From IMG/VR virus record IMGVR_UViG_3300009184_000029, positions 158,830 to 222,829 of that record: a stretch of DNA of 64,000 nucleotides; one strand, 5' to 3'. Positions 11,881 through 41,772 of the stretch are shown in pieces (position 1 is the first letter of the stretch; each line of letters begins with the position of its first letter). Below the pieces are notes generated by a model. It worked only from the letters and a program-made list of their open reading frames with translations. It was not told where the DNA came from and made no database searches. The translations under genes were made by a program, and so were the position numbers.

Positions 11881-12339
11881 ATGGCAGATGGAAGAACATA
11901 CGGTATAAATTTTCCTTTTAAAGATTCTTTAAATGGTAAATATTTGGATTTGTCCGATACTGCTGATGAAGAAATCAGAAGTAATTTAATCCACTTATTA
12001 TTATCTAGAAAAGGAAGTAGGTATTTTTTACCTGATTTTGGGACTCGATTATATGAATATATTTTTGAACCACTTGATGGACCAACATTTACCGATATTG
12101 AAGCGGAAATCAGAGATGCTGTTGAGAAGTATATTCCAAATCTAACAATAAATGGAATTAATATAACTTCAACTGAAAGTGAAGAGGGGAGTGATGTTGT
12201 GACTACAAATCAAGACATTTTAAGAACTGTTGATGCTGGCTCACAATCAATACCTGATTATACTGCGAAAATAAGAGTTGACTACACAATAACAAATGAT
12301 GCATTTAAGAGCAAAGATTTTGTAATAATTAACCTATAA
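11881..12339 (+). CDS. Baseplate wedge subunit gp25/GPW-like
   Basis: IRSNLIHLLLSRKGSRYFLPDFGTRLYEYIFEP is the typical gp25 signature. Confidence 0.92.
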   Translation: MADGRTYGINFPFKDSLNGKYLDLSDTADEEIRSNLIHLLLSRKGSRYFLPDFGTRLYEYIFEPLDGPTFTDIEAEIRDAVEKYIPNLTINGINITSTESEEGSDVVTTNQDILRTVDAGSQSIPDYTAKIRVDYTITNDAFKSKDFVIINL

Positions 12340-12343
12340 AAAT

Positions 12344-14182
12344 ATGGCTGAAAAAAAAATATCGTATACTACAAGGGATTTCCAATCTATAAGACAAGAA
12401 TTAGTAACCTTTGTTCAAACTTATTATCCTGATTTAATCCAAAATGTAAATGACGCTTCAGTTTTTTCAGTTTTATTGGACTTAAATGCTGCGGTTACCG
12501 ACAATCTTCAGTTCCATATTGATAGAAGTATTCAAGAAACGGTATTACAATATGCTCAACAAAAAAGTTCAATATATAATATTGCGAGAACTTATGGTTT
12601 AAAAATACCTGGATTAAGACCATCAGTTGCGGTTGTCGATTTTTCTATTACTGTTCCCGCTTTAGGTGATGCTGAGGATTTAAGATATTGTGGAGTTTTA
12701 AGAGCGGGAAGTCAAGTTATCGGGGCAGGTCAAATTTTCGAAACAGTTAACGATGTTGATTTTACCTCACCGTTAAATGCTGAAGGATATCCAAACAGAG
12801 TTAAAATTCCAAATTTTGATGCTAATAATAATTTAATTAATTATACTATTGTTAAAAGGGAAACTGTTGTTAATGGTATTACAAAAGTATTCAAAAGAAC
12901 AATAACAGGTAGTGATGCTAAACCATTTTTAGAGTTATTTTTACCTGAAAAAAATGTTTTAGGTGTTACAAGTGTATTACTTAAAGATGGGGTTAGTTAT
13001 TCTAATGTACCTACATCTCAAGAATTTTTAGGTACTACTGATAGATGGTATGAAGTATATGCTTTAGCGGAGGACAGAGTTTTTGTACCCGACACTTCAA
13101 AACCCGCTGACCAACCAGGACTTAAAGTTGGTAAATATATCCAAACTAATACAAGGTTTATAACTGAATATACACCTGAAAGTTTTCTTAAATTAACTTT
13201 CGGTGGAGGAAACACTTCTGCTGATGAACAATTAAGAGACTTTGCGAGAAATGGTATAAACTTAGATTTATCAAAATATCAGAATAATTTCTCATTAGGT
13301 TCAACGTTAAAACCAAATTCAACTTTGTTTATTCAATATAGAATTGGTGGAGGATTGGCGACTAATTTAGGTGTTAATGTTATAAACCAAATTGGAACTA
13401 TATCTTTCTTTGTAAACGGACCGTCACAGAGTGTTAATCAAAACGTTCAACAGTCATTACAATGTAACAATGTTACGGCTGCGATTGGTGGGGCAGATAG
13501 ACCAAGTTTAGAAGAGGTTAGAAATTATGTAGGATTTAATTTCTCGGCTCAAAAAAGAGCGGTAACCATAAATGACTATCAATCAATACTTAGAACAATG
13601 CCGTCACAATATGGGGCACCGGCAAAGGTTGCAGTTTTTGAACAAGATAATAAAATTGTGGTAAAACTTTTATCATACGATACTAATGGTGCTTTAACAA
13701 ATATTGTATCAAATACATTAATATCAAATATTGCGAATTATCTATCAAACTATAGAATGATTAATGATTATATCTCAGTACAAACTGCTGATGTCATTGA
13801 CTTATCATTGGACATTTCAGTTGTTCTTAATTCTACACAAAGTCAGGGAGCGGTTGTTAGTAGTATAATTAACAAAGTTACCGCATTCTTTAGTCCTACA
13901 CAAATAGAAATGGGAGAAACAATTTATATTTCAGAATTAAGAAGAATTTTACAATCTGAAAATGGTGTTCTTTCTGTTGCAGATATTTCAGTTTACAATA
14001 AAGTTGGAGGTCAGTACTCATCATCAGAAACATCAATGAGTTACTCTGATGCGACTACTAAAAAAATACAACTTAATGAAGAAACTCTTTACGCAGAACC
14101 AACCCAAATATACCAAATTAGATTCCCTGCTAAAGACATTATCGTTAGAACAAAGAATTTAACTACAGTAAACATTTCCTAA
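12344..14182 (+). CDS. Baseplate wedge protein gp6 / baseplate J-like
   Basis: YTTRDFQSIR..L, NIARTYG, YRIGGG, AIGGAD, QKRAVTINDY motifs; follows gp25. Confidence 0.9.
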   Translation: MAEKKISYTTRDFQSIRQELVTFVQTYYPDLIQNVNDASVFSVLLDLNAAVTDNLQFHIDRSIQETVLQYAQQKSSIYNIARTYGLKIPGLRPSVAVVDFSITVPALGDAEDLRYCGVLRAGSQVIGAGQIFETVNDVDFTSPLNAEGYPNRVKIPNFDANNNLINYTIVKRETVVNGITKVFKRTITGSDAKPFLELFLPEKNVLGVTSVLLKDGVSYSNVPTSQEFLGTTDRWYEVYALAEDRVFVPDTSKPADQPGLKVGKYIQTNTRFITEYTPESFLKLTFGGGNTSADEQLRDFARNGINLDLSKYQNNFSLGSTLKPNSTLFIQYRIGGGLATNLGVNVINQIGTISFFVNGPSQSVNQNVQQSLQCNNVTAAIGGADRPSLEEVRNYVGFNFSAQKRAVTINDYQSILRTMPSQYGAPAKVAVFEQDNKIVVKLLSYDTNGALTNIVSNTLISNIANYLSNYRMINDYISVQTADVIDLSLDISVVLNSTQSQGAVVSSIINKVTAFFSPTQIEMGETIYISELRRILQSENGVLSVADISVYNKVGGQYSSSETSMSYSDATTKKIQLNEETLYAEPTQIYQIRFPAKDIIVRTKNLTTVNIS

Positions 14183-28908: not shown

Positions 28909-31086
28909 ATGGCAACATATTCGATATCAGTAACAGGGGATTGTAGTAACACAAATAATGGGGTGTTTAATTTAAATATTGACCCAGGTTCAGGACCTTA
29001 TTTAGTGTCTTGGACAGGTAATATTTTTTCACCACAAACCACCTCTCAAAATTATGTCCAAACAGGACTTAGTGCTGGAAGTTATTCAATAACAATCACA
29101 GACTCTTCATTACCTGTTAATATAGTTACAGGTCCTATTTTATTCTACATTTCATCTGGATTTAGTTTAAATGTTTCAAATGTTATTGATACAACATGTT
29201 CAATATCAAACGGTTCTATAACATTGAATTCTAGTTCAAATTACGGAAATACTAATGCTGATTTATATTTTACAAATGAAAACGGTATAACTAACAGATT
29301 ACAAACAATAAAATTAAGTCAATTAGATTATACTGTTAGTAATTTAAGTAACGGAACTTATTATTTTAGAGGTGTTGACGAAGGAGGTTGTATTTGTAAC
29401 AGTCAAACTGCTATTGTTAGAAATTCATCTAATTTTGATTTTGGTTTATTTGTTGTTGATACTAATAGTTGTGGTACAGACTCAGGTAAACTTTATGTAA
29501 CAGGGTTAACAGGTACTCCACCATTCACATACCAATGGGTAGGAGCGTCAAATATTCAACAGACTACAGACTATGCAACTGGGTTAACTCAGGGTTTTTA
29601 TACTTGTACTATTGAAGATTCTACAGGGTGTGTCACTTCTAGAAGTGCTACCATATCATTATTAAGTCCAATGTCGTTAAGTAATTACACTATTGAAACA
29701 CCAACATGTGTTGGTAATGATGGTTCATTAACTGTTTATTTAAATGGAGGAACACCACCATATTATTGTTTATTATCAAATGGTGAGGTTATTACAACTT
29801 TAAACACTGGTATAACTTTTAATAACCTTGTATCAACCACATACCAGTTAGAGATTACGGATGCGACTTTATGTAAATTAAATTTAACTATTCCTGTAAT
29901 TTCACCTAACTCATTTAATGTTTATTCGGTAAGTACTACAAATTCAAATTGTTCGTATAGAGATGGTAAAATAAGTATTTTAATGCAAGATGGAATACCT
30001 CCTTATACTGCGACAATTACTAAAAATAACGGGGATACCCAAACTTTAGTAACATACCAAAGTGATATTACTTTCCAGGGTCTTGAATCGGGTACTTATG
30101 ATTTAAATATTTCCGATAGTTTATCATTATGTTCTTATTCAAGTGGATATACTATAGATAATGTTACAGAATTTACATCAGTATTAAGTACAACTGGAGC
30201 GACTTGTAGTAATGATAATGGGGTTTTAAGGGTACAAACAACACCATCAACTACTGCAACAACTTACTACAATTACACGTTAAATAACGGATTTTCTAGT
30301 GGACCAACATATGTGACGGATTACTATTTCACAGGATTAAGTGTTGGAAATTATACATTGGCAGTTCAGAATTCAAATAATTGTATTGAATCTTATGATT
30401 TTGCAATTTCCCAAGGAAACACCGCACCAAATATAACTTTATTATCAACAGGATGTGGTACAGGTAGTGGTGGTACTATTTCTCTTATTATTGATGGAGG
30501 TCAGTATCCTTATACTATCGAATGGGGTACTAATATTAGTGGACAAACAGGTACTTTTATAACTGGATTAACTGCTGATTTTTATGAGGTTACTGTGACA
30601 GATGCTAATGGATGTCAAGACTATTCATCTACTGAAATAGTATGTGCTCAAAGAGTTGCGTCATCACAAAGTATTAATGTTGGAGGTATTGTTAGTAAAA
30701 CTACAAAAACTAATGGACTTACAATTTATAAAATGTTGTCACAAACATTTGCAACTTCGATATCTAACGCTGAAAATTGTATTTTAACCGCGACCACATT
30801 TACGGCTAAAGCAGTTTTGGATAGTATTGAATATACTAAAGAATTCTATAATGGTACTTCGATAGATGACTATCCTAGCGATGAATTGTGGGAAACGATT
30901 ACTGAAACTTTATTATCATCAGTTTACGGTGTGGCGTCTGTTGATATTGATATTGTGACAAATAGTGTTGTAATTACAAGTGAACAAGTTGGGGGGGTTG
31001 ATGTACTTGCAAATAAAACTTTATATTATTATTTAACCATAGATTGTGAATCTTCTTGTCAATTTTCAGGAGGAACAAGTTGTTAA
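28909..31086 (+). CDS. SprB-repeat (Ig-like) protein
   Basis: Multiple repeats of C....G.I....GG.PPY...W...TGL..G.Y.V.(I/V)TD..GC. Confidence 0.8.
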   Translation: MATYSISVTGDCSNTNNGVFNLNIDPGSGPYLVSWTGNIFSPQTTSQNYVQTGLSAGSYSITITDSSLPVNIVTGPILFYISSGFSLNVSNVIDTTCSISNGSITLNSSSNYGNTNADLYFTNENGITNRLQTIKLSQLDYTVSNLSNGTYYFRGVDEGGCICNSQTAIVRNSSNFDFGLFVVDTNSCGTDSGKLYVTGLTGTPPFTYQWVGASNIQQTTDYATGLTQGFYTCTIEDSTGCVTSRSATISLLSPMSLSNYTIETPTCVGNDGSLTVYLNGGTPPYYCLLSNGEVITTLNTGITFNNLVSTTYQLEITDATLCKLNLTIPVISPNSFNVYSVSTTNSNCSYRDGKISILMQDGIPPYTATITKNNGDTQTLVTYQSDITFQGLESGTYDLNISDSLSLCSYSSGYTIDNVTEFTSVLSTTGATCSNDNGVLRVQTTPSTTATTYYNYTLNNGFSSGPTYVTDYYFTGLSVGNYTLAVQNSNNCIESYDFAISQGNTAPNITLLSTGCGTGSGGTISLIIDGGQYPYTIEWGTNISGQTGTFITGLTADFYEVTVTDANGCQDYSSTEIVCAQRVASSQSINVGGIVSKTTKTNGLTIYKMLSQTFATSISNAENCILTATTFTAKAVLDSIEYTKEFYNGTSIDDYPSDELWETITETLLSSVYGVASVDIDIVTNSVVITSEQVGGVDVLANKTLYYYLTIDCESSCQFSGGTSC

Positions 31087-31090
31087 TTAA

Positions 31091-32068
31091 ATGAGAAGTA
31101 TTACTCTAAATAGCGTAAATGGTACACCACCATATAGGATTTTCGCATGTGATTCATCGGAAACCGATTGTACATTAGTTTATTATACCGAAAATTCAAT
31201 TCCACCATCGGTTGAAATACCGATACCAACAAAGTACTCAACCGCCCCATCAGTTAGAATAAAAGTGTATAATACTGACGGGTGTATTTTAATTGAGGAT
31301 TTTAATTGTGTCACACCAACTCCAACACCTACACCTACAATTACTCCAACAATACCTCCTACACCGTCAATGACACCGTCAATGACTCCAACTATATCTT
31401 TAACACCTTCAAATACCCCAACAATTTCTATTACACCGTCAATAACTCCTTCTACAACAGTAACACCTACTGTAACCAATACCCCGACACCAAGTTCGTT
31501 ACCTGAAACTCCCCAAGCTTATTTGTTTATTGAACCATTTAGTGCTTCCTCAAGTATAGGTAATTATATGTACAACAATGGTTCAACAGGGTTTTACGGA
31601 TTTACAAATGCTACTAAACCTAGTTCATCATCTTCGGCCTTTACATTAGAGATGAATCTTTATTGTAGTTATTCAGGGTGGACAAATGGGGAATTACCTG
31701 CAATTGTTAAATCACAAATACCTCAGGCAACATCTGGGTTTGATTCTTTGGGTAATCCAATAATTTCATATAATTTTCAAACAGTACAAATACCACCTGA
31801 TAGTGTTTTAGATAATGCTTGGTATACATGGATAATACCACCGGCATATACTAATAACCAATACCAACTTGAAATCGGGTTGAGTGACAATAACCCAAAT
31901 ATTTTTACAAGTGTTTACACTGAACCAACCATATATTCAAATAGTTTCTATTATTCAGGTGGAACAATTGCTCAATATACTTACCGAGTTTATACTTCTT
32001 ACCCTGACCCAACGTTTAGAATAAATAACAATACCGTTCTTTATTTTAAAGGAAGTGAGGTAGGGTAA
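31091..32068 (+). CDS. Modular protein: N-terminal SprB-like adaptor, Pro/Thr linker, unknown C-terminal domain
   Basis: N-terminal 73 aa paralogous to 32925 and 41479; ~60-aa TPT tract. Confidence 0.7.
   Translation: MRSITLNSVNGTPPYRIFACDSSETDCTLVYYTENSIPPSVEIPIPTKYSTAPSVRIKVYNTDGCILIEDFNCVTPTPTPTPTITPTIPPTPSMTPSMTPTISLTPSNTPTISITPSITPSTTVTPTVTNTPTPSSLPETPQAYLFIEPFSASSSIGNYMYNNGSTGFYGFTNATKPSSSSSAFTLEMNLYCSYSGWTNGELPAIVKSQIPQATSGFDSLGNPIISYNFQTVQIPPDSVLDNAWYTWIIPPAYTNNQYQLEIGLSDNNPNIFTSVYTEPTIYSNSFYYSGGTIAQYTYRVYTSYPDPTFRINNNTVLYFKGSEVG
31310..31500 (+). repeat. Pro/Thr (TPT/TPS) low-complexity coding repeat
   Basis: ACN CCN codon repeats with synonymous variation. Confidence 0.9.
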
Positions 32069-32076
32069 TAATTATA
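32069..32076 (+). promoter_or_regulatory. Putative late promoter variant TAATTATA
   Basis: TAATTAT ends 5 nt before ATG 32081. Confidence 0.4.
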
Positions 32077-32080
32077 GTAT

Positions 32081-32923
32081 ATGTCATTTGTTTATAAAAA
32101 TCCACTAACCGCCATTGTAACACAAGGACCCCAAAGTGTTAAAAGAACACAAACTTTTGGTAATTCTTATAGTGTTAATAATATTGGTGGATACATGGAG
32201 GTGTATACTTTAAACGATTTAGTATACACTATCCCGTCAGGTACGACAGGTATTGTAGAATATTCGGGAAATACCATACCTGTTGATTTTTATAAAGGTA
32301 ATGGTAACCCATGGTCATATAATGTTTTAAGTTTAGGTTCTGATAATATTTCTTCGGGTAGAAGAAGACTTGGTATGTTAGTTTATGTTTATGAACAAGA
32401 CCAAGTTTATCAGTTTCATATTAGCGGTTACACTTCTTTATGGACAGCAGCGACTGCTAGTACTAACTGTGTTAATATTTCTGATTTTGGTACCACGATT
32501 AAAAATAATACTGTTGCAGGTCAAAATTTTATTAACGCTTGGACTGCTAGTACTATTGAGGATGTTAGTGGATACACAAGTGAAACTGCGGTTTGGAGAA
32601 AGTTTAGTACTGGGAATAGTAGTGGGGGAACGGGAATTACTGGGTCAGGTACCACAGGATATATTCCAAAATGGAATTCCAGCTCAAGTCTAACAAACAG
32701 TTTAATCCGAGATAATGGAACCACAGTATCCATAGGCTCCCCATCAAGTGTTGCCGCCATACTTGAGGTAGCCTCAACGTCACAAGGGGTTTTATTCCCT
32801 AGAATGACACAATCGCAAAGATTGGCAATTAGTTCACCAACCCCTGGTTTAATTGTTTATCAAACTGATAGTACTGACGGGTTATATATTTATAAAGTTG
32901 GAGGATGGATACAAATAATATAA
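32081..32923 (+). CDS. Fibre-like structural protein with Bacteroidota-type C-terminal motif
   Basis: RRLGMLVYV, GSGTTGYIPKW, LEVASTSQGVLFPRMTQSQRLAISSPTPGLIVYQTD. Confidence 0.65.
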   Translation: MSFVYKNPLTAIVTQGPQSVKRTQTFGNSYSVNNIGGYMEVYTLNDLVYTIPSGTTGIVEYSGNTIPVDFYKGNGNPWSYNVLSLGSDNISSGRRRLGMLVYVYEQDQVYQFHISGYTSLWTAATASTNCVNISDFGTTIKNNTVAGQNFINAWTASTIEDVSGYTSETAVWRKFSTGNSSGGTGITGSGTTGYIPKWNSSSSLTNSLIRDNGTTVSIGSPSSVAAILEVASTSQGVLFPRMTQSQRLAISSPTPGLIVYQTDSTDGLYIYKVGGWIQII

Positions 32924-32924
32924 T

Positions 32925-34352
32925 ATGGCAGGAATTTTAACTATAAATAATATAACAGGGATACCACCGTATCAGATATACGTTTGTGATATAAATGGTA
33001 ATAATTGTCAATTAACAACTTACGACCAAGACCCAGTTTATTTACCAATATTGGTCCAAATACCTGATGAGTTTTCAGGTATTGATAATATTTTTATAAA
33101 AATAATTGATGGTAATAATTGTGAGGAAAGACAAGTCTTTGTTTGTCCAACACATACTCCAACACCTTCAGTTACCCAAACCCCAAATGTTACACAAACG
33201 TTAACAAGAACACCAACACCTTCAGTTACTAATACTAATACGCCAACAGTTACCCAAACACCAACTAAAACATCAACTAATACACCCACCCCAACCAAAA
33301 CTCCGACACAAACTCCGACTAATACTCAGACACCTACAAATTCAAACACACCTACAAATACTCCAACCCCAACAGTTACGAAAACATCAACTAACACTCC
33401 CACTCCATCAATAACTGCTACGAGAACACCGACAAGGACAATGACTAAAACCCCATCACCAACTCCTTCGGGAATTGTCACCTGTCTTACGTTGAATAAT
33501 TATTATAATGGTTTTGATTGTTACTATGGTGTATATAATTCAGTTAATGATAAATTAATTCTATCTGAGACAAATAGTGGTTCCACTTACATCGTAAATG
33601 CATCAACTTTAACAATCGACTCAACTATATTAACTTTGGATTCATTCAAGATGTCTTATAACCCTAATACTAACGTAACTGCGGTAATTGAACAAACTAA
33701 TAATATGATTTATATTATTTCAGGTACAAGTACTGCGTCCACAATATCTATAATTGGACCAAGAGGGGTCGCTTTTAATACTACTGATAATAATTTACAT
33801 GTTGCGAAAGGAAATCAAGTTAATATCTATAACACATCATTTAGCTTAATTAATACATATTTTGCCGATAATCTTGAGTATGACCTAACCTATAATTCTA
33901 CCGATAATACAATGTATATCTGTAACTTTAATAGTAATAATGTATCTGTTTTTGATTGTTCTCTAAGTTCTGTAACGGCTACAATATCTGTTGGAACTAA
34001 TCCGTCAAGATTAACTTACTACCCTAACGGTAACAAAGTCTATGTAATTAATGATGGTGACGATACTATATCTGTGATTGATTGCGGGACTAATACCGTG
34101 ACCAGTACTATTACTTTTACATTAGGCCCATTTGAAGATTTAGTTGATTTGATTTGTATAAATTCTCTAAACAAAATAATTGTGACTGATGGGTCAGGGC
34201 AAAATCTTTATGAAGTTAATGCAACTACAGACACCATAATATGTTCAACATCCACATTCCCAAGTTCTGCGAGAGGTATTGTATACGACAGTCTAAGAGG
34301 ATATACTTATGTTTTAGATAATTCCATGGCAAGACTCAATCAATATATTTAA
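32925..34352 (+). CDS. Modular protein: adaptor, long Pro/Thr linker, YncE/YVTN-type beta-propeller
   Basis: TISVGTNPSRLTY...KVYVIN..DDTISVID..TNTV repeat signature. Confidence 0.75.
   Translation: MAGILTINNITGIPPYQIYVCDINGNNCQLTTYDQDPVYLPILVQIPDEFSGIDNIFIKIIDGNNCEERQVFVCPTHTPTPSVTQTPNVTQTLTRTPTPSVTNTNTPTVTQTPTKTSTNTPTPTKTPTQTPTNTQTPTNSNTPTNTPTPTVTKTSTNTPTPSITATRTPTRTMTKTPSPTPSGIVTCLTLNNYYNGFDCYYGVYNSVNDKLILSETNSGSTYIVNASTLTIDSTILTLDSFKMSYNPNTNVTAVIEQTNNMIYIISGTSTASTISIIGPRGVAFNTTDNNLHVAKGNQVNIYNTSFSLINTYFADNLEYDLTYNSTDNTMYICNFNSNNVSVFDCSLSSVTATISVGTNPSRLTYYPNGNKVYVINDGDDTISVIDCGTNTVTSTITFTLGPFEDLVDLICINSLNKIIVTDGSGQNLYEVNATTDTIICSTSTFPSSARGIVYDSLRGYTYVLDNSMARLNQYI
33148..33470 (+). repeat. 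Pro/Thr low-complexity coding repeat (~105 aa)
   Basis: TPTPSVTQTP.. / TPTNTPTPT.. tract. Confidence 0.9.
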
Positions 34353-34405
34353 TATTCAGAAATATATTTATTTTAATATATTTTCTTACAAAATGATTCC
34401 TCAAT

Positions 34406-34413
34406 TATTTATA
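34406..34413 (+). promoter_or_regulatory. Putative late promoter TATTTATA
   Basis: TATTTAT ends 5 nt before ATG 34418. Confidence 0.55.
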
Positions 34414-34417
34414 TAAT

Positions 34418-36439
34418 ATGACTTGGTATTTTAAGGATTGTAACTCAGATTATTATTATTCGTTTAGTAATCAGTCTTCATTTGAAGGTTCGTTAGTTGA
34501 AGGTAATGTTTATGCGATTACTACCACAGATTTGGTGGTAATATGTACAACTGCTCAAAATATAGATTCGATACCGACTTATTTAATTAACACTGAAACA
34601 ATCCAAGATATAATTTTAATTGACGGAGATTGTACCACGTGTAATAACATATATGGTTTAGGGGTTACACCAACTCCAACGCCAACAATGACAAATACTC
34701 CAGGAGGTAGTCCGACCCCGACAAAAACGGCAACTCCAAGTCCGACACCAACGTATACTCCAACACCAACAGTTTCTCAAACACCTACCCAAACTCCAAC
34801 GATTACTGCAACACCTACCAAAACACCTACGAATACCCCAACGACAAGTATTACTCCGACACATACTCCAACTCCAAGTATTACAAGTACTCCATTCCCA
34901 ACACAAACCTCTCCGGTATACCCTGTTGTGACAGGAAATACTGAAGTTCTTAGTATTCTAACAATATTACCATTAACTGTTACTTGTTACCCAATTTCAC
35001 CATCTTATTATGGTGGAAGTGATGGTTCAGTTACTTTAGGAATTAATGGAGGGACTCCACCATACAATATAAGATGGTCCACAGGTGCTCAAGGAGTACA
35101 ACTTACAAATTTATCAGCGGGTACATATAGTGCTCAAGTTAGTGATTATTATAGTGATTTTACAACTTCAATAACTTGTACTGTAGAACAAGTAACACCA
35201 ACTCCTACACAGACGTTAACTCCTACGATAACACCAACACCATCATCTTATATACCAAAGTTTTGTTTATCATTCTTCTACTATGGAGATTACTACTATA
35301 TAAATTTTGAATTCAATGGAACTACAACGTATCCTATGGATTTAAAATGGATTTCAACAACGACAAATCTAACTTCATCAAAAGTTAACATAACATTTAA
35401 TACGACTAATTCAGTTTGGTCGACATCATCGTTTTATCCCGATTTGATTCCTGCTAATAATTTTGACCAAATAGAAATTAAGTTCACTGCTGAAGGTGGT
35501 AATTCTTATACAACTCCAGTAAATCTTAATTGGGTTACTTTGGGTATTATTGTTGATGATTTGATAATTAATGACAATTACCCATATGGTAAAGTATGTG
35601 ATGATAGTTATGATATTAAAATAACTAAAGTTGAAACATTCCCATCATGTTCAAATACGAATAACGGTAAAATTACAATATATACAAATAATGTTGTTGG
35701 AACCTTAGAGTATTCTATTAATTCATTAGACGGACCTTGGCAATCAAGTAATCCAATATTTTTTAATGTTACACCTGGAACATATTCAGTTGCAGCTAGA
35801 TTAGTTTCAAACACTGATAGTTACGAGATATATGACGGAGTGGTTGTTTCAACAGTACAATCCCCAAGTCTACAGACAAATATAACGGGTAGAGATATAT
35901 TTGTTAGAGGTAAAGTAGGTATGTCGGGAATTGAAACAGTTAAGAATTACACATTCCAAATTAATAATCAAATATCTAATTCAACATTAAGTAGTGTAAA
36001 TATAACTTTCAGTATTAGTACAGTATTAAAGGTTAATACTGATGTTGATAGTTATAATCCATATTTAATGATATCTAAACCATCGGTACAATTAGGTGAA
36101 GGTACATTACTGAATCCTATCGATAATACTTGGTATCAAACAACTATAGAGTCTGGATGTGAAAGTTTTGATAATAAATTAACCTCTTATACTGAAACAA
36201 TACAAACATATAAATACAATACTGATGTTTCAGTCAGTGATATTATTAGTGGTTCATTTAATTTAACATGGTTACAACCTGTTATAGAAAATTATAGTTT
36301 TGAAAACTATAAATGTTTCATAAAGAATGAATGGGATTTTCAGGTCCAAATTTTAAATGTTAGTTACCCATCAACATGTAAACCTGATAATATAAATAAT
36401 TCACCACTAAGGTTTACTGGTAACTATTATACAGGATAA
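34418..36439 (+). CDS. Modular protein: Cys-rich N-module, Pro/Thr linkers, SprB repeats
   Basis: [22 protein letters not shown]...NLSAGTYS and PSC..NGKITI...LEYSI...PGTYSV repeats; two PT tracts. Confidence 0.75.
34663..34915 (+). repeat. Pro/Thr low-complexity coding repeat
   Basis: [12 protein letters not shown]...TPFPTQTSP. Confidence 0.9.
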
Positions 36440-36454
36440 AAATCATATTAGAAA

Positions 36455-36462
36455 TAATTATA
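36455..36462 (+). promoter_or_regulatory. Putative late promoter variant TAATTATA
   Basis: TAATTAT ends 7 nt before ATG 36469. Confidence 0.4.
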
Positions 36463-36468
36463 TAAACA

Positions 36469-38718
36469 ATGGGATATATACAAAGAAACACCGAAGGATT
36501 ATTAGTTACTAGATTAACAGATACTGGTAGATTAAAATTATCACAAGGTAATTTCAATATTAGTTATTTCCAAGTAGGGGACAGTGAACTTAATTATACT
36601 GCAATAACTGAGTCTTCATATACTAATTTGGATGGTAAATCTATAAATTTTAGATTCAGTGGTTCAAGTGTATTAGAACCCCCATTTAATGCTCAAAATA
36701 CAACAGGTGGGTTACAATCAACAAAAAACGCTGTAAAATACCCAATGTACCTTAATGGTGAAGGGACTACTCAGTATGGTATTCCATTTATGGATTCAAT
36801 TAATGAATCAATTTATAACACTGCAACACCATTAGGATTCTTTTCAGCATGTACACAAGGTTATATGCCTTATATAACTTCTGCTTATACTCTTAATTCT
36901 AGAATGTATAGAAATACTTCAGCTTTTACACCAAGTAATCTTTTTACCGTGTCAGGCAATTTAAACTGTACTAATAGTGCTTCTGCAACTACAGGATTAG
37001 TTGGAAGTTACCTAAGGATATTTTATTCAAATCAAAGTGCTAGTTGTAATTGTGGGACAATACTATCTGTATTTCCATCAATGGTTTATTTAGTTAATAG
37101 TTATAACATTTCGACTTCTGCAGTTACTTTTGATAGAATCACACCTAACTTTAACATATTAGGTTCTGTACCGGGTCAGAGTAGATTATTTTATTATCCA
37201 TCGGGTATGACCGCATTGTATGATACTGTAACACCATCTCAATATTGGTATACTGCGGTAACAAGTTATGAATCTATTTGTACCCCTAATGATGGATACT
37301 CTAAAGTATGGAATATGAATATTCCTTGGACTGAAAATCCTGCAGGATTAAATGATACTGTTAATGAAGGATATGGTCAGTTTGGTTCTGTAAATTATAT
37401 AGGTACTAAAGAATATTTGGGATACATGAGTTCTTTAGGACAATCAGCAACAAGTGAAGTTTACTATGTTAACTCTTTAGGTGATGAAGTTGTTGTAAAA
37501 CCCGAAGACCAAAAAGCGATTGCGATTATACATTATACAAATAATAGTATTATAAATTATTATGGTGAAAAATTTGCGGTAGAACCTAATAGCACAATTT
37601 TAGATTCATCAGGTTACGCTTCTAATTTTAAAGTAATTATGCCAACATTGATGTGGCATAAAAATACCGGAGCAACACCATATGGTGAGACTTTTTATAT
37701 TAATCCTCCATCATTTATTGATGATACAGATGTTTTTAAAGTTAATTATTTAACATCTACTAAGAATTCTGATATGAATTATCCTGGAATTAGATATTTC
37801 GATTTATGGGATAATTATGGTCAGGCTAATGGTAAACCAAGTAGAGTTGGTAAAGTTTTTCCTGATGATAAGTTAGTTGTAATTGATGATGAAGAAATAG
37901 TTGCATCAATGTCATGGGCGTCTAATAGAAATTTCACATTACCTGCACCTAAAGTATCATTAACTCCACCAGATGTTTGTAACCAAAATAGTAATTCAGT
38001 TGGTATTTTGACTGGTACTGACCAAACAATGTGGGTTACATATAGATTTGATAGTGTATTATTCGATGGAATGCATTGTAATTATTATCAGTCAATACAA
38101 GGACCATCTACAGGTTGTTCAATATCAACTCAAAACGTTTCAGTACAATTTGGACCGGAATTTGCATTCATGAATACAGGTTCCACTACAGGATATAGTT
38201 TAAATACTTTTTATATTTTAGCACAAATTACGGACACTGGAGAAAGACCATCCCCAACAGGGTGGAAACAAATGAATTATAATTCAGATTTAGTAGATTA
38301 TGATGTGGTCGGAGCCGGCTCAAACAATTTCATAACAAAAACAGGTATGACTAATGTTAGTTTTGTCATTGACCCTACAAGCTATAATTTGGGTACCTCC
38401 TATGATTTAAGTACTGTATTAACCTTACCGACAAATGGTACTACTGATACGCAAGTTAATTTTGGTGATGAGTATTTCTTCTATGGTAGTATTGAAACTG
38501 ATATTCAAGCAACAATATATGAGATGAGATATAGAATAAATTTACCTAATAATTTATTTACAACTTCATCAAATCCTTCATGGACGGATACATATTCTCC
38601 GTATATGACTGAGATTGGTCTTTACGATTCCGAAAAAAATCTTATGATTTTATCAAAGTTTCAAACACCTGTTAAACGAGACGGCATTCAACAGGCGGTT
38701 GTTAAACTTGATTTCTAA
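36469..38718 (+). CDS. Baseplate/tail-fibre attachment protein (tail-collar-fibre-like termini with large insertion)
   Basis: N-terminal LTDTGRLKLSQGNFNISYFQVGDSE and C-terminal YMTEIGLYDSEKNLMILSK..PVK motifs. Confidence 0.6.
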   Translation: MGYIQRNTEGLLVTRLTDTGRLKLSQGNFNISYFQVGDSELNYTAITESSYTNLDGKSINFRFSGSSVLEPPFNAQNTTGGLQSTKNAVKYPMYLNGEGTTQYGIPFMDSINESIYNTATPLGFFSACTQGYMPYITSAYTLNSRMYRNTSAFTPSNLFTVSGNLNCTNSASATTGLVGSYLRIFYSNQSASCNCGTILSVFPSMVYLVNSYNISTSAVTFDRITPNFNILGSVPGQSRLFYYPSGMTALYDTVTPSQYWYTAVTSYESICTPNDGYSKVWNMNIPWTENPAGLNDTVNEGYGQFGSVNYIGTKEYLGYMSSLGQSATSEVYYVNSLGDEVVVKPEDQKAIAIIHYTNNSIINYYGEKFAVEPNSTILDSSGYASNFKVIMPTLMWHKNTGATPYGETFYINPPSFIDDTDVFKVNYLTSTKNSDMNYPGIRYFDLWDNYGQANGKPSRVGKVFPDDKLVVIDDEEIVASMSWASNRNFTLPAPKVSLTPPDVCNQNSNSVGILTGTDQTMWVTYRFDSVLFDGMHCNYYQSIQGPSTGCSISTQNVSVQFGPEFAFMNTGSTTGYSLNTFYILAQITDTGERPSPTGWKQMNYNSDLVDYDVVGAGSNNFITKTGMTNVSFVIDPTSYNLGTSYDLSTVLTLPTNGTTDTQVNFGDEYFFYGSIETDIQATIYEMRYRINLPNNLFTTSSNPSWTDTYSPYMTEIGLYDSEKNLMILSKFQTPVKRDGIQQAVVKLDF

Positions 38719-38730
38719 GTAATATCAATT

Positions 38731-39321
38731 ATGAAAAATTTAAAAAATACACCCAAGATATTGGGACTAGATGTTTCTACAAAAACAATTGGGTGGGCAT
38801 TATTTGACTTTAAAACTAAAGAATTATTGGAATTAACTCATATTTCTCCTGTTATAAAAAGTAAGTCTGACAATAAAATGGAGGAAATGATACTAAAGTC
38901 TGAAATTTTTAAAAAGAAATTAGACGAGTATAAAAATTTAGGTATTATTAAAGTAGTAATTGAGGAACCTTTATTAAATTCTAATAATGCTTACACCATC
39001 GGAACTCTTTTAAGATATAATACATTAATTACTAAACAAGTATATGATGTACTTGGAGTTGTTCCTGAGTTTGTGTCTACTTATAACTCAAGAAAATTAG
39101 CATTTCCTGAATTAGTTCAAAAAAATAATAAAGATAAATTTGTATTATTTGGTGGTTATCCTAAAGACTGTGATAAAAAACAAATTATTTGGGAATTAGT
39201 CTCTAAAAAAGAACCACAAATTACATGGTTATATACAAAGAATAATACTTTAAAGAAAGAAAACTTTGATATGACCGACGCTTATACCGTTGTTCTTAGT
39301 TATTTAAATTCTAACAATTAA
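38731..39321 (+). CDS. RuvC-like Holliday junction resolvase / RNase H-fold nuclease
   Basis: ILGLDVST..IGWA, VVIEEP, DMTDAY acidic tetrad. Confidence 0.8.
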   Translation: MKNLKNTPKILGLDVSTKTIGWALFDFKTKELLELTHISPVIKSKSDNKMEEMILKSEIFKKKLDEYKNLGIIKVVIEEPLLNSNNAYTIGTLLRYNTLITKQVYDVLGVVPEFVSTYNSRKLAFPELVQKNNKDKFVLFGGYPKDCDKKQIIWELVSKKEPQITWLYTKNNTLKKENFDMTDAYTVVLSYLNSNN

Positions 39322-41479
39322 TATCGTTAGTCACTCCACTAGCACTTCCTATTCTATTTGATGTAAATGTGAAATCTGATGGGTATGATGGATTCCATCC
39401 GGCAATCTGTTGTATATATGTCAGTTTAGGACCTGTAAAGGTACTACCATAGAAAGATTGGTTAATTTCTACACCAGGTACTGGTTCCTTTTGAACTATT
39501 GTTCTCTCACCTATTCCTAAATAAGGACATACTCTATAAACGTATGTGTATATTGACGCTGATGGTGTAGGTGTATTAGTTGGTGTTAAAGTAGGTGTTG
39601 TGGTAACAGTTTGAGTCGGTGTTTGACTAGGTACAGGAGTACAGAATCTACAATCAAATAAATTCCCACTATCAACACTATTTAAAGTGTTTAAAGGTGA
39701 ACTGAATACTTCCCCAATAAACGCTCCGCAAATTGATACGTTATCAACGGTTGCTTTAATTATTGCCCCTATTGGTAGAGTCCAAGCCACACTAACTAAA
39801 TAAACTTGACCTGTCGAACAATCTCTAAGTTGTTTTGTTAACTGACTTGTAAATGATTTTTGGAATATATTAAATGTTGTTTCACCTGTAACAAAACAAT
39901 TCTTAGCTGCGTTAGTTGGGGTTAATGTTGGTGTTTGAGAAGGTAGGGGAGGACTTATTGTCACACCTGATACTGAAACTGATTTACCATAACAAACTTG
40001 AGTTGGAGTTGGTGTAGTTGTCGGAGTTGTTGTTAATGTTGGGGTAAGTGTGGGAGTTGGTGTGATTAAACTTGAAATTGAAAAATCACAATTAAAAATA
40101 GAATCAAATGTGAATGTTGAACAATCGATATTAGGTGTTGGGGTAGGTGTTGCAGGTATGTTCGCAAAAAATGATGAACTGAAATCAGGACATAATCCAT
40201 AGTAAGGACTTGCTCCCGATATAACACAATCATATCCTGGTAAAGTACCTAAACACCATCCTGTATAACCTGTGTTATAATATATAAATGCGGGTGTCGT
40301 TGATGTATTAGAATAATAGATATTATATCCGTTATATGTCTTATATCTATAATATGTTCCATCATATTGTGAGTACCCACTAAAGTTAGTGTAAATATAA
40401 TATTGTGAAGTTGGGCAACCTGTAAGAGGGGTTACTGTTGGTGTTGGGGTTGGAGTTGATGTGTTTGAAGGTGATACAGTTGGAAATGCTGATAAAGTTG
40501 GTAGTGGTGTATGTGTAATACTTGGAGTTGGAGTATTACTTGCAGTCGGTGTATTGGTTACACCTGGTGTTTCAGTTATTGATGGTGTTGGTGTTTGAGT
40601 GGATGTAATTGTTGGTGTAGGACTTGGAGTTCTTGTTGGGGTATTTGATGGTGTGATTGAAATTGTTGGAGTTACAGTTGCGGTTTGTGTTGGGGTTGGA
40701 GTCACTGAAGTTATACAACCTGCATCAGTTAAACATGCGATATTTGGATTGTAGTATGTACTTGTGAAAGCTGATGAATTTGCGACAGAATTATATAAAG
40801 TGTTATCTTTATAATAACTAAATCTTACATAATCACTTAAATTTGTTAGGGAACTATTAACATTAACACATATTGTTGTGGACGTTATTGAGGTATAGGA
40901 TAATTTATTATACACCCCAGGACACGTGTAGTACTCTAAAGATAATCTGTTATTATTTACTGGTGAAGTATTACCTGACGCCGAATTAAGGTCTGATTGT
41001 CGAATTGTAAATTGAATACAATTACATAAAGATGTTGTTGATGGGGTTACGGTTGCGGTTGGTGTTTTAGTTTGAGTTGTGGTTGGAGTACTTGTTAATG
41101 TAATCGTAGGTGTCGGTGTTTGAGTTGCAGTATTAGTTGGGGTTGGTGTGTGAGTAGGAGTTGCCGAAGGAGTGTTAGTTGGAGTTGATGTTGGAGCAGC
41201 GGTTGAGGTTGGTGTAGGTGTTGGAACACTAGCACATGTGTATATTGTTGTACATTGTGTACAACTTGTGTAAGTTATACCATTACCTGACAAGTAGTTA
41301 TACACAGGTAATCCTGATGTAAAAGTAGTATATACTGCTAAACTACAGCCTGTGTAACTATCCGTCTGAATATAGTACGTTGTACCTGCGGAGAAAGAAT
41401 ACGTGGGTGAAAGGTATTGAAACTGAAATCGTGAACCATCACAACAACCCGAAAATCCTATCCAATTTAAACTTGCCAT
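39311..41479 (-). CDS. Modular Cys-rich protein with about six Pro/Thr linkers
   Basis: Small Cys-containing domains alternate with TPT tracts; coupled to 41479..41700. Confidence 0.75.
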   Translation of the reverse strand: MASLNWIGFSGCCDGSRFQFQYLSPTYSFSAGTTYYIQTDSYTGCSLAVYTTFTSGLPVYNYLSGNGITYTSCTQCTTIYTCASVPTPTPTSTAAPTSTPTNTPSATPTHTPTPTNTATQTPTPTITLTSTPTTTQTKTPTATVTPSTTSLCNCIQFTIRQSDLNSASGNTSPVNNNRLSLEYYTCPGVYNKLSYTSITSTTICVNVNSSLTNLSDYVRFSYYKDNTLYNSVANSSAFTSTYYNPNIACLTDAGCITSVTPTPTQTATVTPTISITPSNTPTRTPSPTPTITSTQTPTPSITETPGVTNTPTASNTPTPSITHTPLPTLSAFPTVSPSNTSTPTPTPTVTPLTGCPTSQYYIYTNFSGYSQYDGTYYRYKTYNGYNIYYSNTSTTPAFIYYNTGYTGWCLGTLPGYDCVISGASPYYGLCPDFSSSFFANIPATPTPTPNIDCSTFTFDSIFNCDFSISSLITPTPTLTPTLTTTPTTTPTPTQVCYGKSVSVSGVTISPPLPSQTPTLTPTNAAKNCFVTGETTFNIFQKSFTSQLTKQLRDCSTGQVYLVSVAWTLPIGAIIKATVDNVSICGAFIGEVFSSPLNTLNSVDSGNLFDCRFCTPVPSQTPTQTVTTTPTLTPTNTPTPSASIYTYVYRVCPYLGIGERTIVQKEPVPGVEINQSFYGSTFTGPKLTYIQQIAGWNPSYPSDFTFTSNRIGSASGVTNDINC

Positions 41480-41700
41480 TATACGTTAAAACAACTTATT
41501 AATGTACAAGTATCGTTATCAATTACTTTCAAACAATACTGTGTATTTTTATCATATGGAGGTGGTACAGTAAAATTATAAGGTAACTCACCTGATGTTA
41601 TTTGTGAAACGTAAATACAATTAGATTGATTTGAGTCACAAATGAAAATTTGGTAAGGAGTTGAACCTGTTATATTATTAACTGTTACTTGTACTGACAT
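41479..41700 (-). CDS. Stand-alone copy of the 73-aa SprB-like adaptor module
   Basis: VNNITGSTPYQIFICD...C...LKVIDNDTC aligns with the N-termini of 31091 and 32925. Confidence 0.75.
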   Translation of the reverse strand: MSVQVTVNNITGSTPYQIFICDSNQSNCIYVSQITSGELPYNFTVPPPYDKNTQYCLKVIDNDTCTLISCFNV

Positions 41701-41704
41701 ATTT

Positions 41705-41712
41705 TATAAATA
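41705..41712 (-). promoter_or_regulatory. Putative late promoter TATTTATA (minus strand)
   Basis: Plus strand TATAAATA at 41705-41712; TATTTAT core ends 5 nt before ATG 41700. Confidence 0.55.
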
Positions 41713-41742
41713 AATATAGAAAATGGTAAAACTTTGTGAAGT

Positions 41743-41772
41743 TTGACAAACCTAAGTTTTTAATTATATTTT
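41743..41772 (+). promoter_or_regulatory. Putative early/middle promoter TTGACA-N16-TATATT(TT)
   Basis: Directly upstream of the primase gene. Confidence 0.55.

What the first reader, a model, noticed from the sequence alone, without database searches (positions are those of the whole stretch)
28909..41700. Cellulosome-like modular appendage kit: shared 73-aa adaptor, Pro/Thr linker and swappable payloads
Seen: three proteins share an N-terminal module T.N..G..PY.I..CD.....C...P..(Y/F)......(I/L)K(I/V).(D/N)...C (31091-31309, 32925-33146, and the whole of 41479-41700 as a stand-alone gene). In two of them it is followed by a long TPT linker and a different payload (an unknown domain; a YVTN beta-propeller). 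Neighbouring genes carry SprB-type Ig repeats. Established: SprB is the Flavobacterium gliding adhesin, and Pro/Thr linkers are typical O-glycosylated spacers of cellulosome and carbohydrate-active enzymes. Inference: the phage builds branched, flexible appendages by docking interchangeable payloads onto a SprB-repeat scaffold, possibly to catch motile Bacteroidota or their biofilm glycans. The stand-alone module could cap empty docking sites.
Basis: partly seen in the sequence, partly recalled or inferred. Interest (0 to 1): 0.72.

Follow-up and report, generated by a model that had tools for sequence, protein, structure and literature searches.

The report
Phage N-terminal Ig-like module with Pro/Thr tethers
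Three proteins of an uncultured jumbo phage do start with the same small, phage-only beta-sandwich module, joined by Pro/Thr tethers to interchangeable domains. This is a large undescribed family of modular tail-region proteins, but nothing shows a cellulosome-like docking system.

Summary
P0001 (31091-32068), P0002 (32925-34352) and the 73-aa P0003 (41479-41700, minus strand) share a ~75-aa N-terminal module (pairwise BLASTP E 2e-15 to 4e-10).

A profile of the module finds 618 protein clusters among 1.84 billion representatives. It starts at the first residues in 143 of 149 top hits. It is often free-standing or followed directly by a Pro/Thr linker and unrelated payloads (YVTN propeller, DUF285, PKD, PA14). 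No hit appeared in species-representative bacterial genomes, GenBank phages, Pfam, NCBIfam or PHROGs.

The model is a six-strand Ig/FN3-like sandwich. It is probably a diverged SprB-type repeat unit (hhalign E 1.9e-4, probability 47%).

The genes lie downstream of gp25/gpJ baseplate genes in a ~294-kb jumbo phage that resembles the Bacteroidota-infecting "moraphages".

- There are no cohesin or dockerin domains, and the module/SprB-protein complex prediction gave no verdict.
- The module evolves faster than P0001's C-terminal domain, and other N-terminal modules replace it in relatives, so both ends swap.
- The free-standing copy is a conserved orthologue, coupled by a stop/start overlap to a multi-linker protein. 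It does not look like a spare cap.

My best reading is tethered accessory adhesins with the module as a protein-attachment handle. A displayed glycan binder is a close rival.

The parts
28909..31086 (+). P0004, 725 aa: seven ~80-aa SprB-like Ig repeat units (residues 5-580) plus a ~145-aa C-terminal domain. The gene lies directly upstream of the first module gene.
   Evidence: Translation. Repeat alignment A3. Pfam SprB 20-26 bits, below the 28-bit cut-off. An orthologue lies immediately upstream of a module gene in 21 of the 23 related loci (not L020; L014 has ~2 kb between) and in L036.
31091..31315 (+). Type I N-terminal module of P0001 (residues 1-75).
   Evidence: AF2 model with pLDDT 82.6, six strands.
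31310..31492 (+). Pro/Thr linker of P0001 (about residues 74-134).
   Evidence: Imperfect ACN-CCN repeats of period 6/12/18.
31502..32068 (+). Conserved C-terminal domain of P0001 (residues 138-325), function unknown. Found in 128 clusters, all named hypothetical.
   Evidence: The AF2 model is only pLDDT 57, so the fold is unresolved.
32081..32923 (+). P0005, 280 aa: fibre-like protein with a conserved N-terminal domain (residues 1-175) and a variable C-terminus. It always follows the P0001-type gene.
   Evidence: 59-82% identity over residues 1-175 in most relatives, 40-54% in the two most distant. Orthologues of 916-1649 aa carry Gly-rich repeats.
32925..33152 (+). Type I N-terminal module of P0002 (residues 1-76).
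   Evidence: Group B clade with 96/93 support.
33147..33467 (+). Pro/Thr linker of P0002 (about residues 75-181).
33480..34352 (+). YVTN-type beta-propeller payload of P0002.
   Evidence: TIGR02276 at 61.8 bits, cut-off 27.85. Weak Pfam YNCE/NHL hits.
34418..36439 (+). P0006, 673 aa: small N-terminal Cys domain, Pro/Thr linkers, one SprB repeat (residues 178-258), a second linker and a C-terminal region.
39311..41479 (-). P0009, 722 aa: an N-terminal 'CCD' small Cys module followed by seven Pro/Thr linkers that separate further small Cys-rich modules.
   Evidence: An HMM of the CCD module, built from relatives only, hits residues 11-84 at E 2.2e-6.
41479..41700 (-). P0003, 73 aa: free-standing type I module. 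Its TAA stop overlaps the ATG of P0009 (TAATG).
   Evidence: The same gene pair occurs in L020 and L033. Group C clade with 98/98 support.
11881..14182 (+). Context: gp25-like and gpJ/gp6-like baseplate wedge genes upstream on the same strand, in a run of closely spaced + strand ORFs.
   Evidence: Pfam GPW_gp25 45.1 bits and Baseplate_J 39 bits. PHROGs baseplate wedge families.

Best explanation
The 73-75-aa element is a phage-specific N-terminal protein module. It is a six-strand Ig/FN3-like beta-sandwich, probably derived from an SprB-type repeat unit, and it carries a likely C20-C27 disulfide staple.

The module heads a large family of modular proteins encoded in the baseplate/tail-fibre gene cluster of uncultured ~300-kb contractile-tailed phages. 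These phages resemble the 'moraphages' and probably infect Bacteroidota. In these proteins small Cys-containing modules and larger binding-type domains are strung together by Pro/Thr tethers. In this window the tethers are 60-110 residues long; in a relative one exceeds 1,100 residues. Each genome keeps about three paralogues.

Proposed mechanism (inferred, not shown): the proteins are virion-borne accessory adhesins on flexible tethers, possibly glycosylated by the phage. The N-terminal module is the protein-protein attachment handle. It fixes the chain, or the free-standing copy, to a partner such as the SprB-repeat protein, the P0009-type protein or the other paralogues. The distal domains make the first weak contacts with the host surface. 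New combinations arise by recombination in or near the repetitive linker-coding DNA.
For: Shown:
- The module is significant and forms a family: 618 clusters, 143 of 149 at the protein start, and 62 of 94 longer members with a Pro/Thr-rich stretch directly after it.
- It looks virus-only: Atlas clusters are 100% viruses, and there was no hit in 185,579 species genomes.
- Fold: pLDDT 82.6 and VIA Z 7.0 to FN3 domains.
- Link to SprB-like units: hhalign E 1.9e-4 over 57 columns in register, TM 0.63 to SprB clusters, and a weak hit inside a P0004 orthologue.
- C20 and C27 are lost together in 15 of 167 modules.
- Tail context: gp25 and gpJ upstream on the same strand in a run of closely spaced ORFs.
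- Payloads are of binding type: YVTN propeller, DUF285, PKD, PA14, PPC, Big_3_5.
- Three copies per genome, forming orthologous groups. Group B carries payloads of 475, 92, 75 and 80 aa.
- A module gene directly follows the SprB-repeat gene in 21 of the 23 related loci and, as a free-standing gene with overlapping stop/start, in L036.
- P0003 is coupled to P0009 by a TAATG overlap.

Supporting inference: four GT2 genes in the genome, and glycosylation cassettes inside the cluster in relatives.
Against: - There are no virion proteomics, and no isolate of this lineage was found among GenBank phages.
- The module/P0004 complex prediction gave no verdict.
- In P0001 orthologues the module is less conserved than the C-terminal domain (36% vs 57%). 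Modules with no detectable similarity replace it in 57 of 102 relatives. In phage fibres that pattern usually marks the exposed, host-facing end, not the anchor.
- Genomes mix module types, so there is no sign that one docking site co-varies with the module.
- Homology to SprB units is only moderate (probability 47%; 8% with small profiles).
Confidence: 0.4

Rival explanations
1. The module is the displayed end. It is a small Ig/CBM-like glycan- or surface-binding domain held out on a Pro/Thr tether, as a CBM is in a cellulase. The conserved C-terminal domain, for example that of P0001, is the part fixed in the virion next to the P0005 fibre.
For: The module evolves faster than P0001's C-terminal domain (36% vs 57%, 0 of 38 exceptions). 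Orthologous P0001-type proteins carry other N-terminal modules, with no detectable similarity, on the same C-terminal domain. The P0001-type and P0005-type genes are always adjacent, and both have conserved domains. The fold is an adhesin-like sandwich with near-invariant aromatic residues (Y15, Y18, F49) and a disulfide staple.
Against: The same module heads more than 15 unrelated payload types that are themselves typical binding domains. A third or more of family members are free-standing ~75-aa proteins with nothing to anchor them. The strict N-terminal position is not expected for a CBM-like binder.
Confidence: 0.3
2. True cohesin/dockerin-style combinatorial docking. The module plugs into individual SprB-type repeats of P0004, perhaps by completing a strand, to build a branched appendage. 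The free-standing copy fills unused sites.
For: A module gene follows the SprB-repeat gene in nearly all related loci, even when it is free-standing. The module aligns with SprB-like units from about position 27 onward, so it lacks the first part of the unit. Both evolve at similar rates of about 35% identity.
Against: No cohesin or dockerin domain was found. The complex prediction scored 0.00, which is no verdict. In L033 the module genes are not next to the SprB-repeat gene. The free-standing copy is a separate conserved orthologue coupled to P0009, not to P0004.
Confidence: 0.15
3. The proteins are not virion parts. They are made late and released at lysis, or act inside the cell, for example to bind EPS or biofilm or to mask receptors.
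For: There are no proteomic data. No signal peptide is needed for release at lysis. P0003 and P0009 lie outside the main structural operon, between the resolvase and primase genes.
Against: P0001 and P0002 lie in the run of closely spaced + strand ORFs with the baseplate and fibre-like genes, separated from their neighbours by 1-13 nt. Synteny with fibre-like P0005 is conserved.
Confidence: 0.1

Closest known systems
Ig-like accessory or adhesin domains on tailed phages (T4 Hoc, T5 pb10, Ig-like domains on tail and fibre proteins; modular gut-phage adhesins, PMC13370021)
   Same: Small beta-sandwich modules on phage structural or accessory proteins. They are modular and exchangeable and are thought to give weak adherence to surfaces.
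   Different: This is a new sequence family with no Pfam, PHROG or NCBIfam hit. It sits strictly at the N-terminus, is often free-standing, is joined by long Pro/Thr linkers, and lies in the baseplate cluster rather than on capsid or tail-tube proteins.
SprB repeat (PF13573) of Bacteroidota gliding adhesins
   Same: The motif register is shared: G-x-P-P-Y ... (I/V)-x-(I/V)-x-D-x-x-G-C. hhalign to the phage's own SprB-like units gives E 1.9e-4. TM to SprB clusters is 0.63.
   Different: The module does not hit PF13573. It lacks the first ~25 positions of the unit, occurs as a single copy at the protein start rather than in long arrays, and has its own C20-C27 pair.
Cellulosome and CAZyme architecture (CBM/dockerin - Pro/Thr linker - catalytic domain)
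   Same: Small Cys/aromatic modules joined to larger domains by Pro/Thr-rich linkers, with extensive domain shuffling.
   Different: No cohesin, dockerin, recognised CBM or glycoside hydrolase domain was found. The proteins are encoded by a phage and have no signal peptide.
Branched receptor-binding-protein systems with conserved N-terminal anchor domains (CBA120 TSP1-4, G7C gp63.1/gp66, Klebsiella jumbo phage phiK64-1); from my own knowledge
   Same: Several paralogous tail proteins share an N-terminal part and differ at the C-terminus. The genes are clustered after the baseplate genes.
   Different: Those anchors are trimeric, are more conserved than the distal part and are not followed by Pro/Thr tethers. 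Here the module is monomer-like Ig fold and evolves faster than at least one payload.
O-glycosylated virion proteins of mycobacteriophages (Freeman et al. 2023, cited in PMC12619734)
   Same: Phage-encoded glycosyltransferases lie next to structural genes whose products carry Ser/Thr-rich stretches.
   Different: Glycosylation is untested here. The linkers are internal Pro/Thr tethers, not C-terminal tails of capsid or tube proteins.

Membership tests
Cellulosome cohesin-dockerin system | Dockerin (PF00404) on the payload proteins and cohesin (PF00963) on a scaffoldin | tested here: not met
   Pfam scans of all ten proteins of the region at E<=0.1 and of 78 family members found neither domain.
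Cellulosome cohesin-dockerin system | Demonstrated or predicted binding of the adaptor to the scaffold | tested here: inconclusive
   Complex prediction of P0004 with the module gave score 0.00, no verdict.
SprB repeat (PF13573) | Match to the Pfam model above the 28-bit gathering score | tested here: inconclusive
   P0006 scores 28.0 bits (at the cut-off). P0004 scores 26.1 bits at best (below it). The module has no hit. Orthologues of P0004 carry precomputed PF13573 hits.
SprB repeat (PF13573) | Homology of the 75-aa module to SprB-type units | tested here: inconclusive
   hhalign of 167 modules against 57 units: probability 47%, E 1.9e-4, 57 columns in register. With small profiles the probability was only 8%.
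Ig/FN3-like beta-sandwich fold | Two-sheet sandwich of six or seven strands, with structural matches to FN3/Ig domains | tested here: met
   AF2 model with pLDDT 82.6 and six strands. VIA Z 7.0, rmsd 2.4 A over 68 residues to FN3 domains. Foldseek E-values are not significant, so this holds at fold level only.
T9SS C-terminal sorting domain (Por_Secre_tail) | C-terminal position and a match to PF18962 | tested here: not met
   The module is N-terminal and has no Pfam hit. There is only a generic structural likeness: TM 0.67-0.73 and Z about 5.8.
Phage RBP N-terminal anchor domain | N-terminal position shared by paralogues with different distal parts | tested here: met
Phage RBP N-terminal anchor domain | The anchor is more conserved than the distal part | tested here: not met
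   36% vs 57% identity, 0 of 38 exceptions. Other module types replace it in 57 of 102 relatives.
Phage RBP N-terminal anchor domain | Presence in the virion and binding to the baseplate or a fibre | not testable with these tools
   No isolate and no proteome. This needs mass spectrometry or cryo-EM.
YVTN beta-propeller (payload of P0002) | TIGR02276 repeat above its cut-off | tested here: met
   61.8 bits against 27.85, two stretches.
'Moraphage' jumbo-phage lineage (PMC12619734) | Genome of 200-307 kb, contractile-tail genes (gp25, gp6), several glycosyltransferases, glutamine synthetase in some members, Bacteroidota-like genes | tested here: inconclusive
   The record is 222.8 kb at 76% completeness, and the same protein occurs on a 293,981-bp contig. 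Relatives lie on contigs of 306,801 and 307,689 bp. gp25 and gpJ are present, as are four GT2 genes and a GS-like gene; HSP70 is absent. No marker-gene phylogeny was done.

The most novel reading that the evidence does not exclude
The three conserved paralogues (A on the P0001 domain, B on a variable payload, C free-standing and coupled to the multi-linker P0009) assemble through their N-terminal modules. They could bind each other or the SprB-type repeats of P0004 by strand completion. This would be a new, phage-specific docking system: combinatorial, glycosylated 'fishing-line' appendages that reach tens to hundreds of nanometres from the baseplate of jumbo phages of gliding Bacteroidota.
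Probability: 0.15. Interest if true: 0.75.

Novelty: new variant of a known kind. Interest (0 to 1): 0.5.

Why it matters
The module defines a large, unnamed, virus-only protein family. It has 618 clusters at 50% identity, every named member is called 'hypothetical', and UniProt members are 'uncharacterized'. The family marks the host-interaction region of an abundant but uncultured group of aquatic jumbo phages.

The architecture is unusual for phage tail proteins: small disulfide-stapled modules, Pro/Thr tethers of 60 to more than 1,100 residues, and swappable binding domains with glycosylation genes nearby. It would give a concrete handle on how very large phages find hosts such as Flavobacteriia.

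It also gives a ready-made natural set of linker-joined domains for studying domain shuffling. Nothing here changes a long-standing question yet, because the function is inferred.

Tried and rejected
- Complex prediction of P0004 (alignment A5) with the module (A2) scored 0.00, no verdict. It is evidence neither for nor against binding.
- The AF2 model of P0001's C-terminal domain reached only pLDDT 57 and was not used for fold searches. The Atlas feature search on it gave only sub-0.9 leads.
- Foldseek against PDB and AFDB clusters gave no significant match for the module. The recurring likeness to T9SS C-terminal domains was rejected as membership, because the position is wrong and there is no sequence hit.
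- tblastn of P0007 and P0003 against 50,697 GenBank phages found nothing. blastn of the baseplate genes also found nothing.
- A scan of 185,579 species-representative genomes found no relative.
- PDB sequence searches with P0005, P0007, P0010 and the module profile gave only chance hits, such as CTCF zinc fingers.
- My early idea that P0006 also starts with the 'CCD' module was not borne out. BLASTP was not significant, and the HMM hits only P0009.
- I tested whether all paralogues of a genome share one module type, which would suggest a single docking site. The test failed: L035 and L036 mix types.
- Linker-coding DNA shows only imperfect (60-80%) repeats between genes. Recombination at the linkers is therefore plausible but not demonstrated.

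Full report
**1. The observation**

- P0001: 31091-32068, + strand, 325 aa.
- P0002: 32925-34352, + strand, 475 aa.
- P0003: 41479-41700, minus strand, 73 aa.

Their first ~75 residues align with 14 invariant positions. Pairwise BLASTP E-values run from 2e-15 to 4e-10. The window is bases 158830-222829 of a 222,829-bp IMG/VR virus record, estimated 76% complete. A profile of the module finds exactly these three copies in that record.

Pro/Thr linkers follow the module in P0001 (about residues 74-134) and P0002 (about residues 75-181). P0002's payload is a YVTN beta-propeller (TIGR02276, 61.8 bits against a cut-off of 27.85). P0001's C-terminal domain matches no family.

The neighbours P0004 and P0006 carry SprB-like units. 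P0004 has seven ~80-aa units; its best Pfam score is 26.1 bits, just under the cut-off. P0006 has one unit at 28.0 bits, at the cut-off.

**2. Context**

Upstream on the same strand are gp25-like and gpJ/gp6-like baseplate wedge genes. After them comes a 2,175-aa ORF and then a run of closely spaced + strand ORFs reaching 38718. P0004, P0001, P0005 and P0002 are separated by 1 to 13 nt.

P0005 is fibre-like. Its N-terminal 175 residues are highly conserved (59-82% identity in most relatives). Its C-terminus varies, and orthologues reach 916-1649 aa with Gly-rich repeats.

Several facts bear on the genome as a whole:
- GC content is 30.7%.
- P0003 also occurs on a 293,981-bp contig, and relatives lie on contigs of 306,801 and 307,689 bp.
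- There are four GT2 glycosyltransferase genes above the cut-off and a glutamine-synthetase-like gene. There is no HSP70 gene.
- No GenBank phage is similar.

This profile fits the 'moraphages' of PMC12619734: aquatic jumbo phages of 200-307 kb, with four core glycosyltransferase groups, glutamine synthetase in some members and predicted Bacteroidota/Flavobacteriia hosts. I did no marker phylogeny, so the assignment is provisional. That paper does not mention the linker proteins.

**3. The module family**

IMG/VR yielded 23 related loci. In every one the module starts its protein, and the proteins range from 71 to more than 2,074 aa.

A profile search of 1.84 billion cluster representatives found 618 clusters at E<=1e-3 and 295 at E<=1e-10. 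Among the 150 listed hits:
- 143 of the 149 that carry a full-length module match have it within three residues of the protein start, and three proteins carry two modules.
- 56 are 110 aa or shorter. Some of these may be cut by contig ends.
- 62 of the 94 longer ones have a Pro/Thr-rich stretch directly after the module.

Atlas clusters of free-standing 74-aa proteins, with 89-219 members each, are 100% viral. A scan of 185,579 species genomes found no relative. Three UniProt members exist and are called uncharacterized. Payloads recognised by Pfam are of binding type: DUF285 (six members), PKD, PA14, PPC, Big_3_5, BiPBP_C, beta-propellers and one Por_Secre_tail.

**4. Fold and origin**

AlphaFold2 on an 18-sequence alignment gives pLDDT 82.6 and six strands. 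The best structural matches are FN3/Ig sandwiches (VIA Z 7.0). T9SS C-terminal domains recur at Z about 5.8 and TM 0.67-0.73. None stands out from the rest, and the Foldseek E-values are not significant.

A profile of 167 modules aligns with a profile of 57 SprB-like units from P0004 orthologues. The alignment has E 1.9e-4 and probability 47% over 57 columns, in the register G-x-P-P-Y ... D-x-x-G-C, and starts about 25 positions into the unit. With small profiles the probability was only 8%. A weak module hit also falls inside a P0004 orthologue. I read the module as a diverged SprB-type unit, with moderate support.

Four Cys are near-invariant. C20 and C27 are lost together in 15 of 167 modules, while C73 is lost alone in 28. 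This points to a C20-C27 staple and fits an extracellular role. That last step is inference.

**5. Paralogues and shuffling**

Related records also hold about three copies each. A tree gives three groupings:
- A group of copies that follow the P0005-type gene (96/93 support). Their proteins are 475, 92, 75 and 80 aa long.
- A group of free-standing copies upstream of a P0009-type gene (98/98 support).
- An unresolved set of copies that follow the SprB-repeat gene.

P0003's TAA stop overlaps P0009's ATG. The same gene pair occurs in L020 and L033.

P0009 has seven linkers and begins with a second small Cys module. An HMM built only from relatives hits it at E 2.2e-6, and further small modules recur between linkers.

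P0001's C-terminal domain is found in 128 clusters. Of 102 full-length representatives:
- 38 carry the module;
- 16 carry a second N-terminal module type;
- 39 carry a third type;
- 2 carry other N-terminal modules, and 4 more have none that I could delimit;
- neither of the two main alternative types shows detectable homology to the module.

Where the module is present it is 36% identical to P0001's, against 57% for the C-terminal domain, with no exception in 38 cases. So both ends swap, and for this protein the C-terminal domain is the constant part.

In L036 a free-standing module gene overlaps the stop of the SprB-repeat gene. A cassette of GT2, GT1/4, methyltransferase and sulfotransferase genes separates it from the P0001-type gene. 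L035 also has glycosyltransferase genes around the cluster.

**6. Mechanism**

Shown: these are modular, linker-joined proteins encoded with baseplate and fibre-like genes.

Inferred: they are virion-borne accessory adhesins on flexible, possibly glycosylated tethers. At about 0.31 nm per residue for an extended polyproline-II-like chain (established value), the tethers in this window would span about 20-35 nm. The 1,141-residue linker in L020 would span about 350 nm.

For the module itself I favour a protein-attachment role (confidence 0.4), for four reasons:
- It always sits at the N-terminus.
- It heads many unrelated binding-type payloads.
- Free-standing copies are conserved and coupled by stop/start overlap to structural-type genes.
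- A module gene follows the SprB-repeat gene in nearly all loci.

The rival reading is that the module is the displayed binder and the C-terminal domain the anchor (0.3). The rate difference and the module replacement support it. Cohesin-like docking on P0004 remains possible (0.15) but has no positive evidence: the complex prediction gave no verdict. A non-virion role is least likely (0.1).

**7. Comparison and novelty**

The closest known things are Ig-like accessory adhesin domains of phages (T4 Hoc and the gut-phage adhesins of PMC13370021), SprB repeats, branched RBP systems with shared N-terminal anchors, and CAZyme-style Pro/Thr linker architecture.

It is not a cellulosome: no cohesin or dockerin domain was found. 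It does not meet the 'anchor more conserved than tip' criterion of RBP anchors.

It is a new, large sequence family and an unusual architecture within a known kind, so I rate it a new variant of a known kind, with interest 0.5.

Noticed in passing
L020:5592-11813 (IMGVR_UViG_3300008448_000249): An open-ended ORF of more than 2,074 aa. In order it has the module, a 100-aa Pro/Thr linker, a 'CCD' small module, an unbroken Pro/Thr linker of about 1,141 residues, a propeller-like domain, and further domains including a P-domain-like stretch. Fully extended, the long linker would span roughly 350 nm.
   Followed up: partly
window 39311-41479 (minus strand), residues 11-84 of P0009; also L016:10976, L022:6814, L020 internal: A second recurrent small Cys module (F-K-x-C-C-D ... 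Y-Y-I ... G-C). An HMM built from relatives hits P0009 at E 2.2e-6. It is N-terminal in some proteins and internal or C-terminal in others. P0006's N-terminus does not match it.
   Followed up: partly
Own genome G000:C1 22717-23175, 87971-88336, 99154-99522, 102555-103004 (outside the window); L035 and L036: The genome has four GT2 glycosyltransferase genes. In relatives, GT2, GT1/4, GlcNAc-transferase, methyltransferase and sulfotransferase genes sit inside or beside the fibre/linker-protein cluster. This suggests the virion proteins are glycosylated.
   Followed up: partly
P0186-P0302 (relatives of P0001 found): The conserved C-terminal domain of P0001 is joined through Pro/Thr linkers to at least two other ~70-85-aa N-terminal module types (one with S-I-N-Y ... 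L-P-Y ... Y-G-T-Y-T-I, one with G-P-F-x-I-Y-T-G-S). Neither shows detectable homology to the module in question.
   Followed up: yes
window 32081-32923 (P0005) and orthologues such as L016:7015-10410: A fibre-like protein with a very conserved N-terminal 175 residues. The C-terminus varies: 280 aa here, ending in a G-x-L-x-P-R-M-T ... G-L-I-V-Y-Q-T-D motif, and 916-1649 aa with G-G-x-x-N-T-A-S-G repeats elsewhere. It always lies directly after the P0001-type gene.
   Followed up: partly
window 38731-39321: A RuvC-like Holliday junction resolvase gene (PHROG 159, E 1.3e-8) lies between the structural run and the P0009/P0003 pair. It is 73-80% identical in relatives and always sits next to the conserved 749-aa P0007, whose function is unknown.
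   Followed up: no
window 14227-20754: A 2,175-aa ORF directly after the gpJ/gp6-like gene has no family hit in Pfam or PHROGs. By position it could be a giant baseplate wedge or hub-periphery protein.
   Followed up: no
window 40001-42000: A GC-skew spike (+0.36) coincides with the minus-strand P0009 gene. The ACN/CCN linker codons on the minus strand read as G-rich on the + strand. This is a composition artefact of the linkers, not a replication signal.
   Followed up: partly
Own genome G000:C1 8129-8788 (outside the window): A glutamine-synthetase-like ORF (PF00120, 73 bits summed), an auxiliary gene also reported in nine moraphages.
   Followed up: no
P0138 (1,419 aa, metagenomic): Eleven partial matches to positions 53-74 of the module profile (the K-I-I-D-x-x-G-C strand) in a repeat protein. 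This fits the idea that this strand is shared with SprB-like repeat arrays.
   Followed up: no
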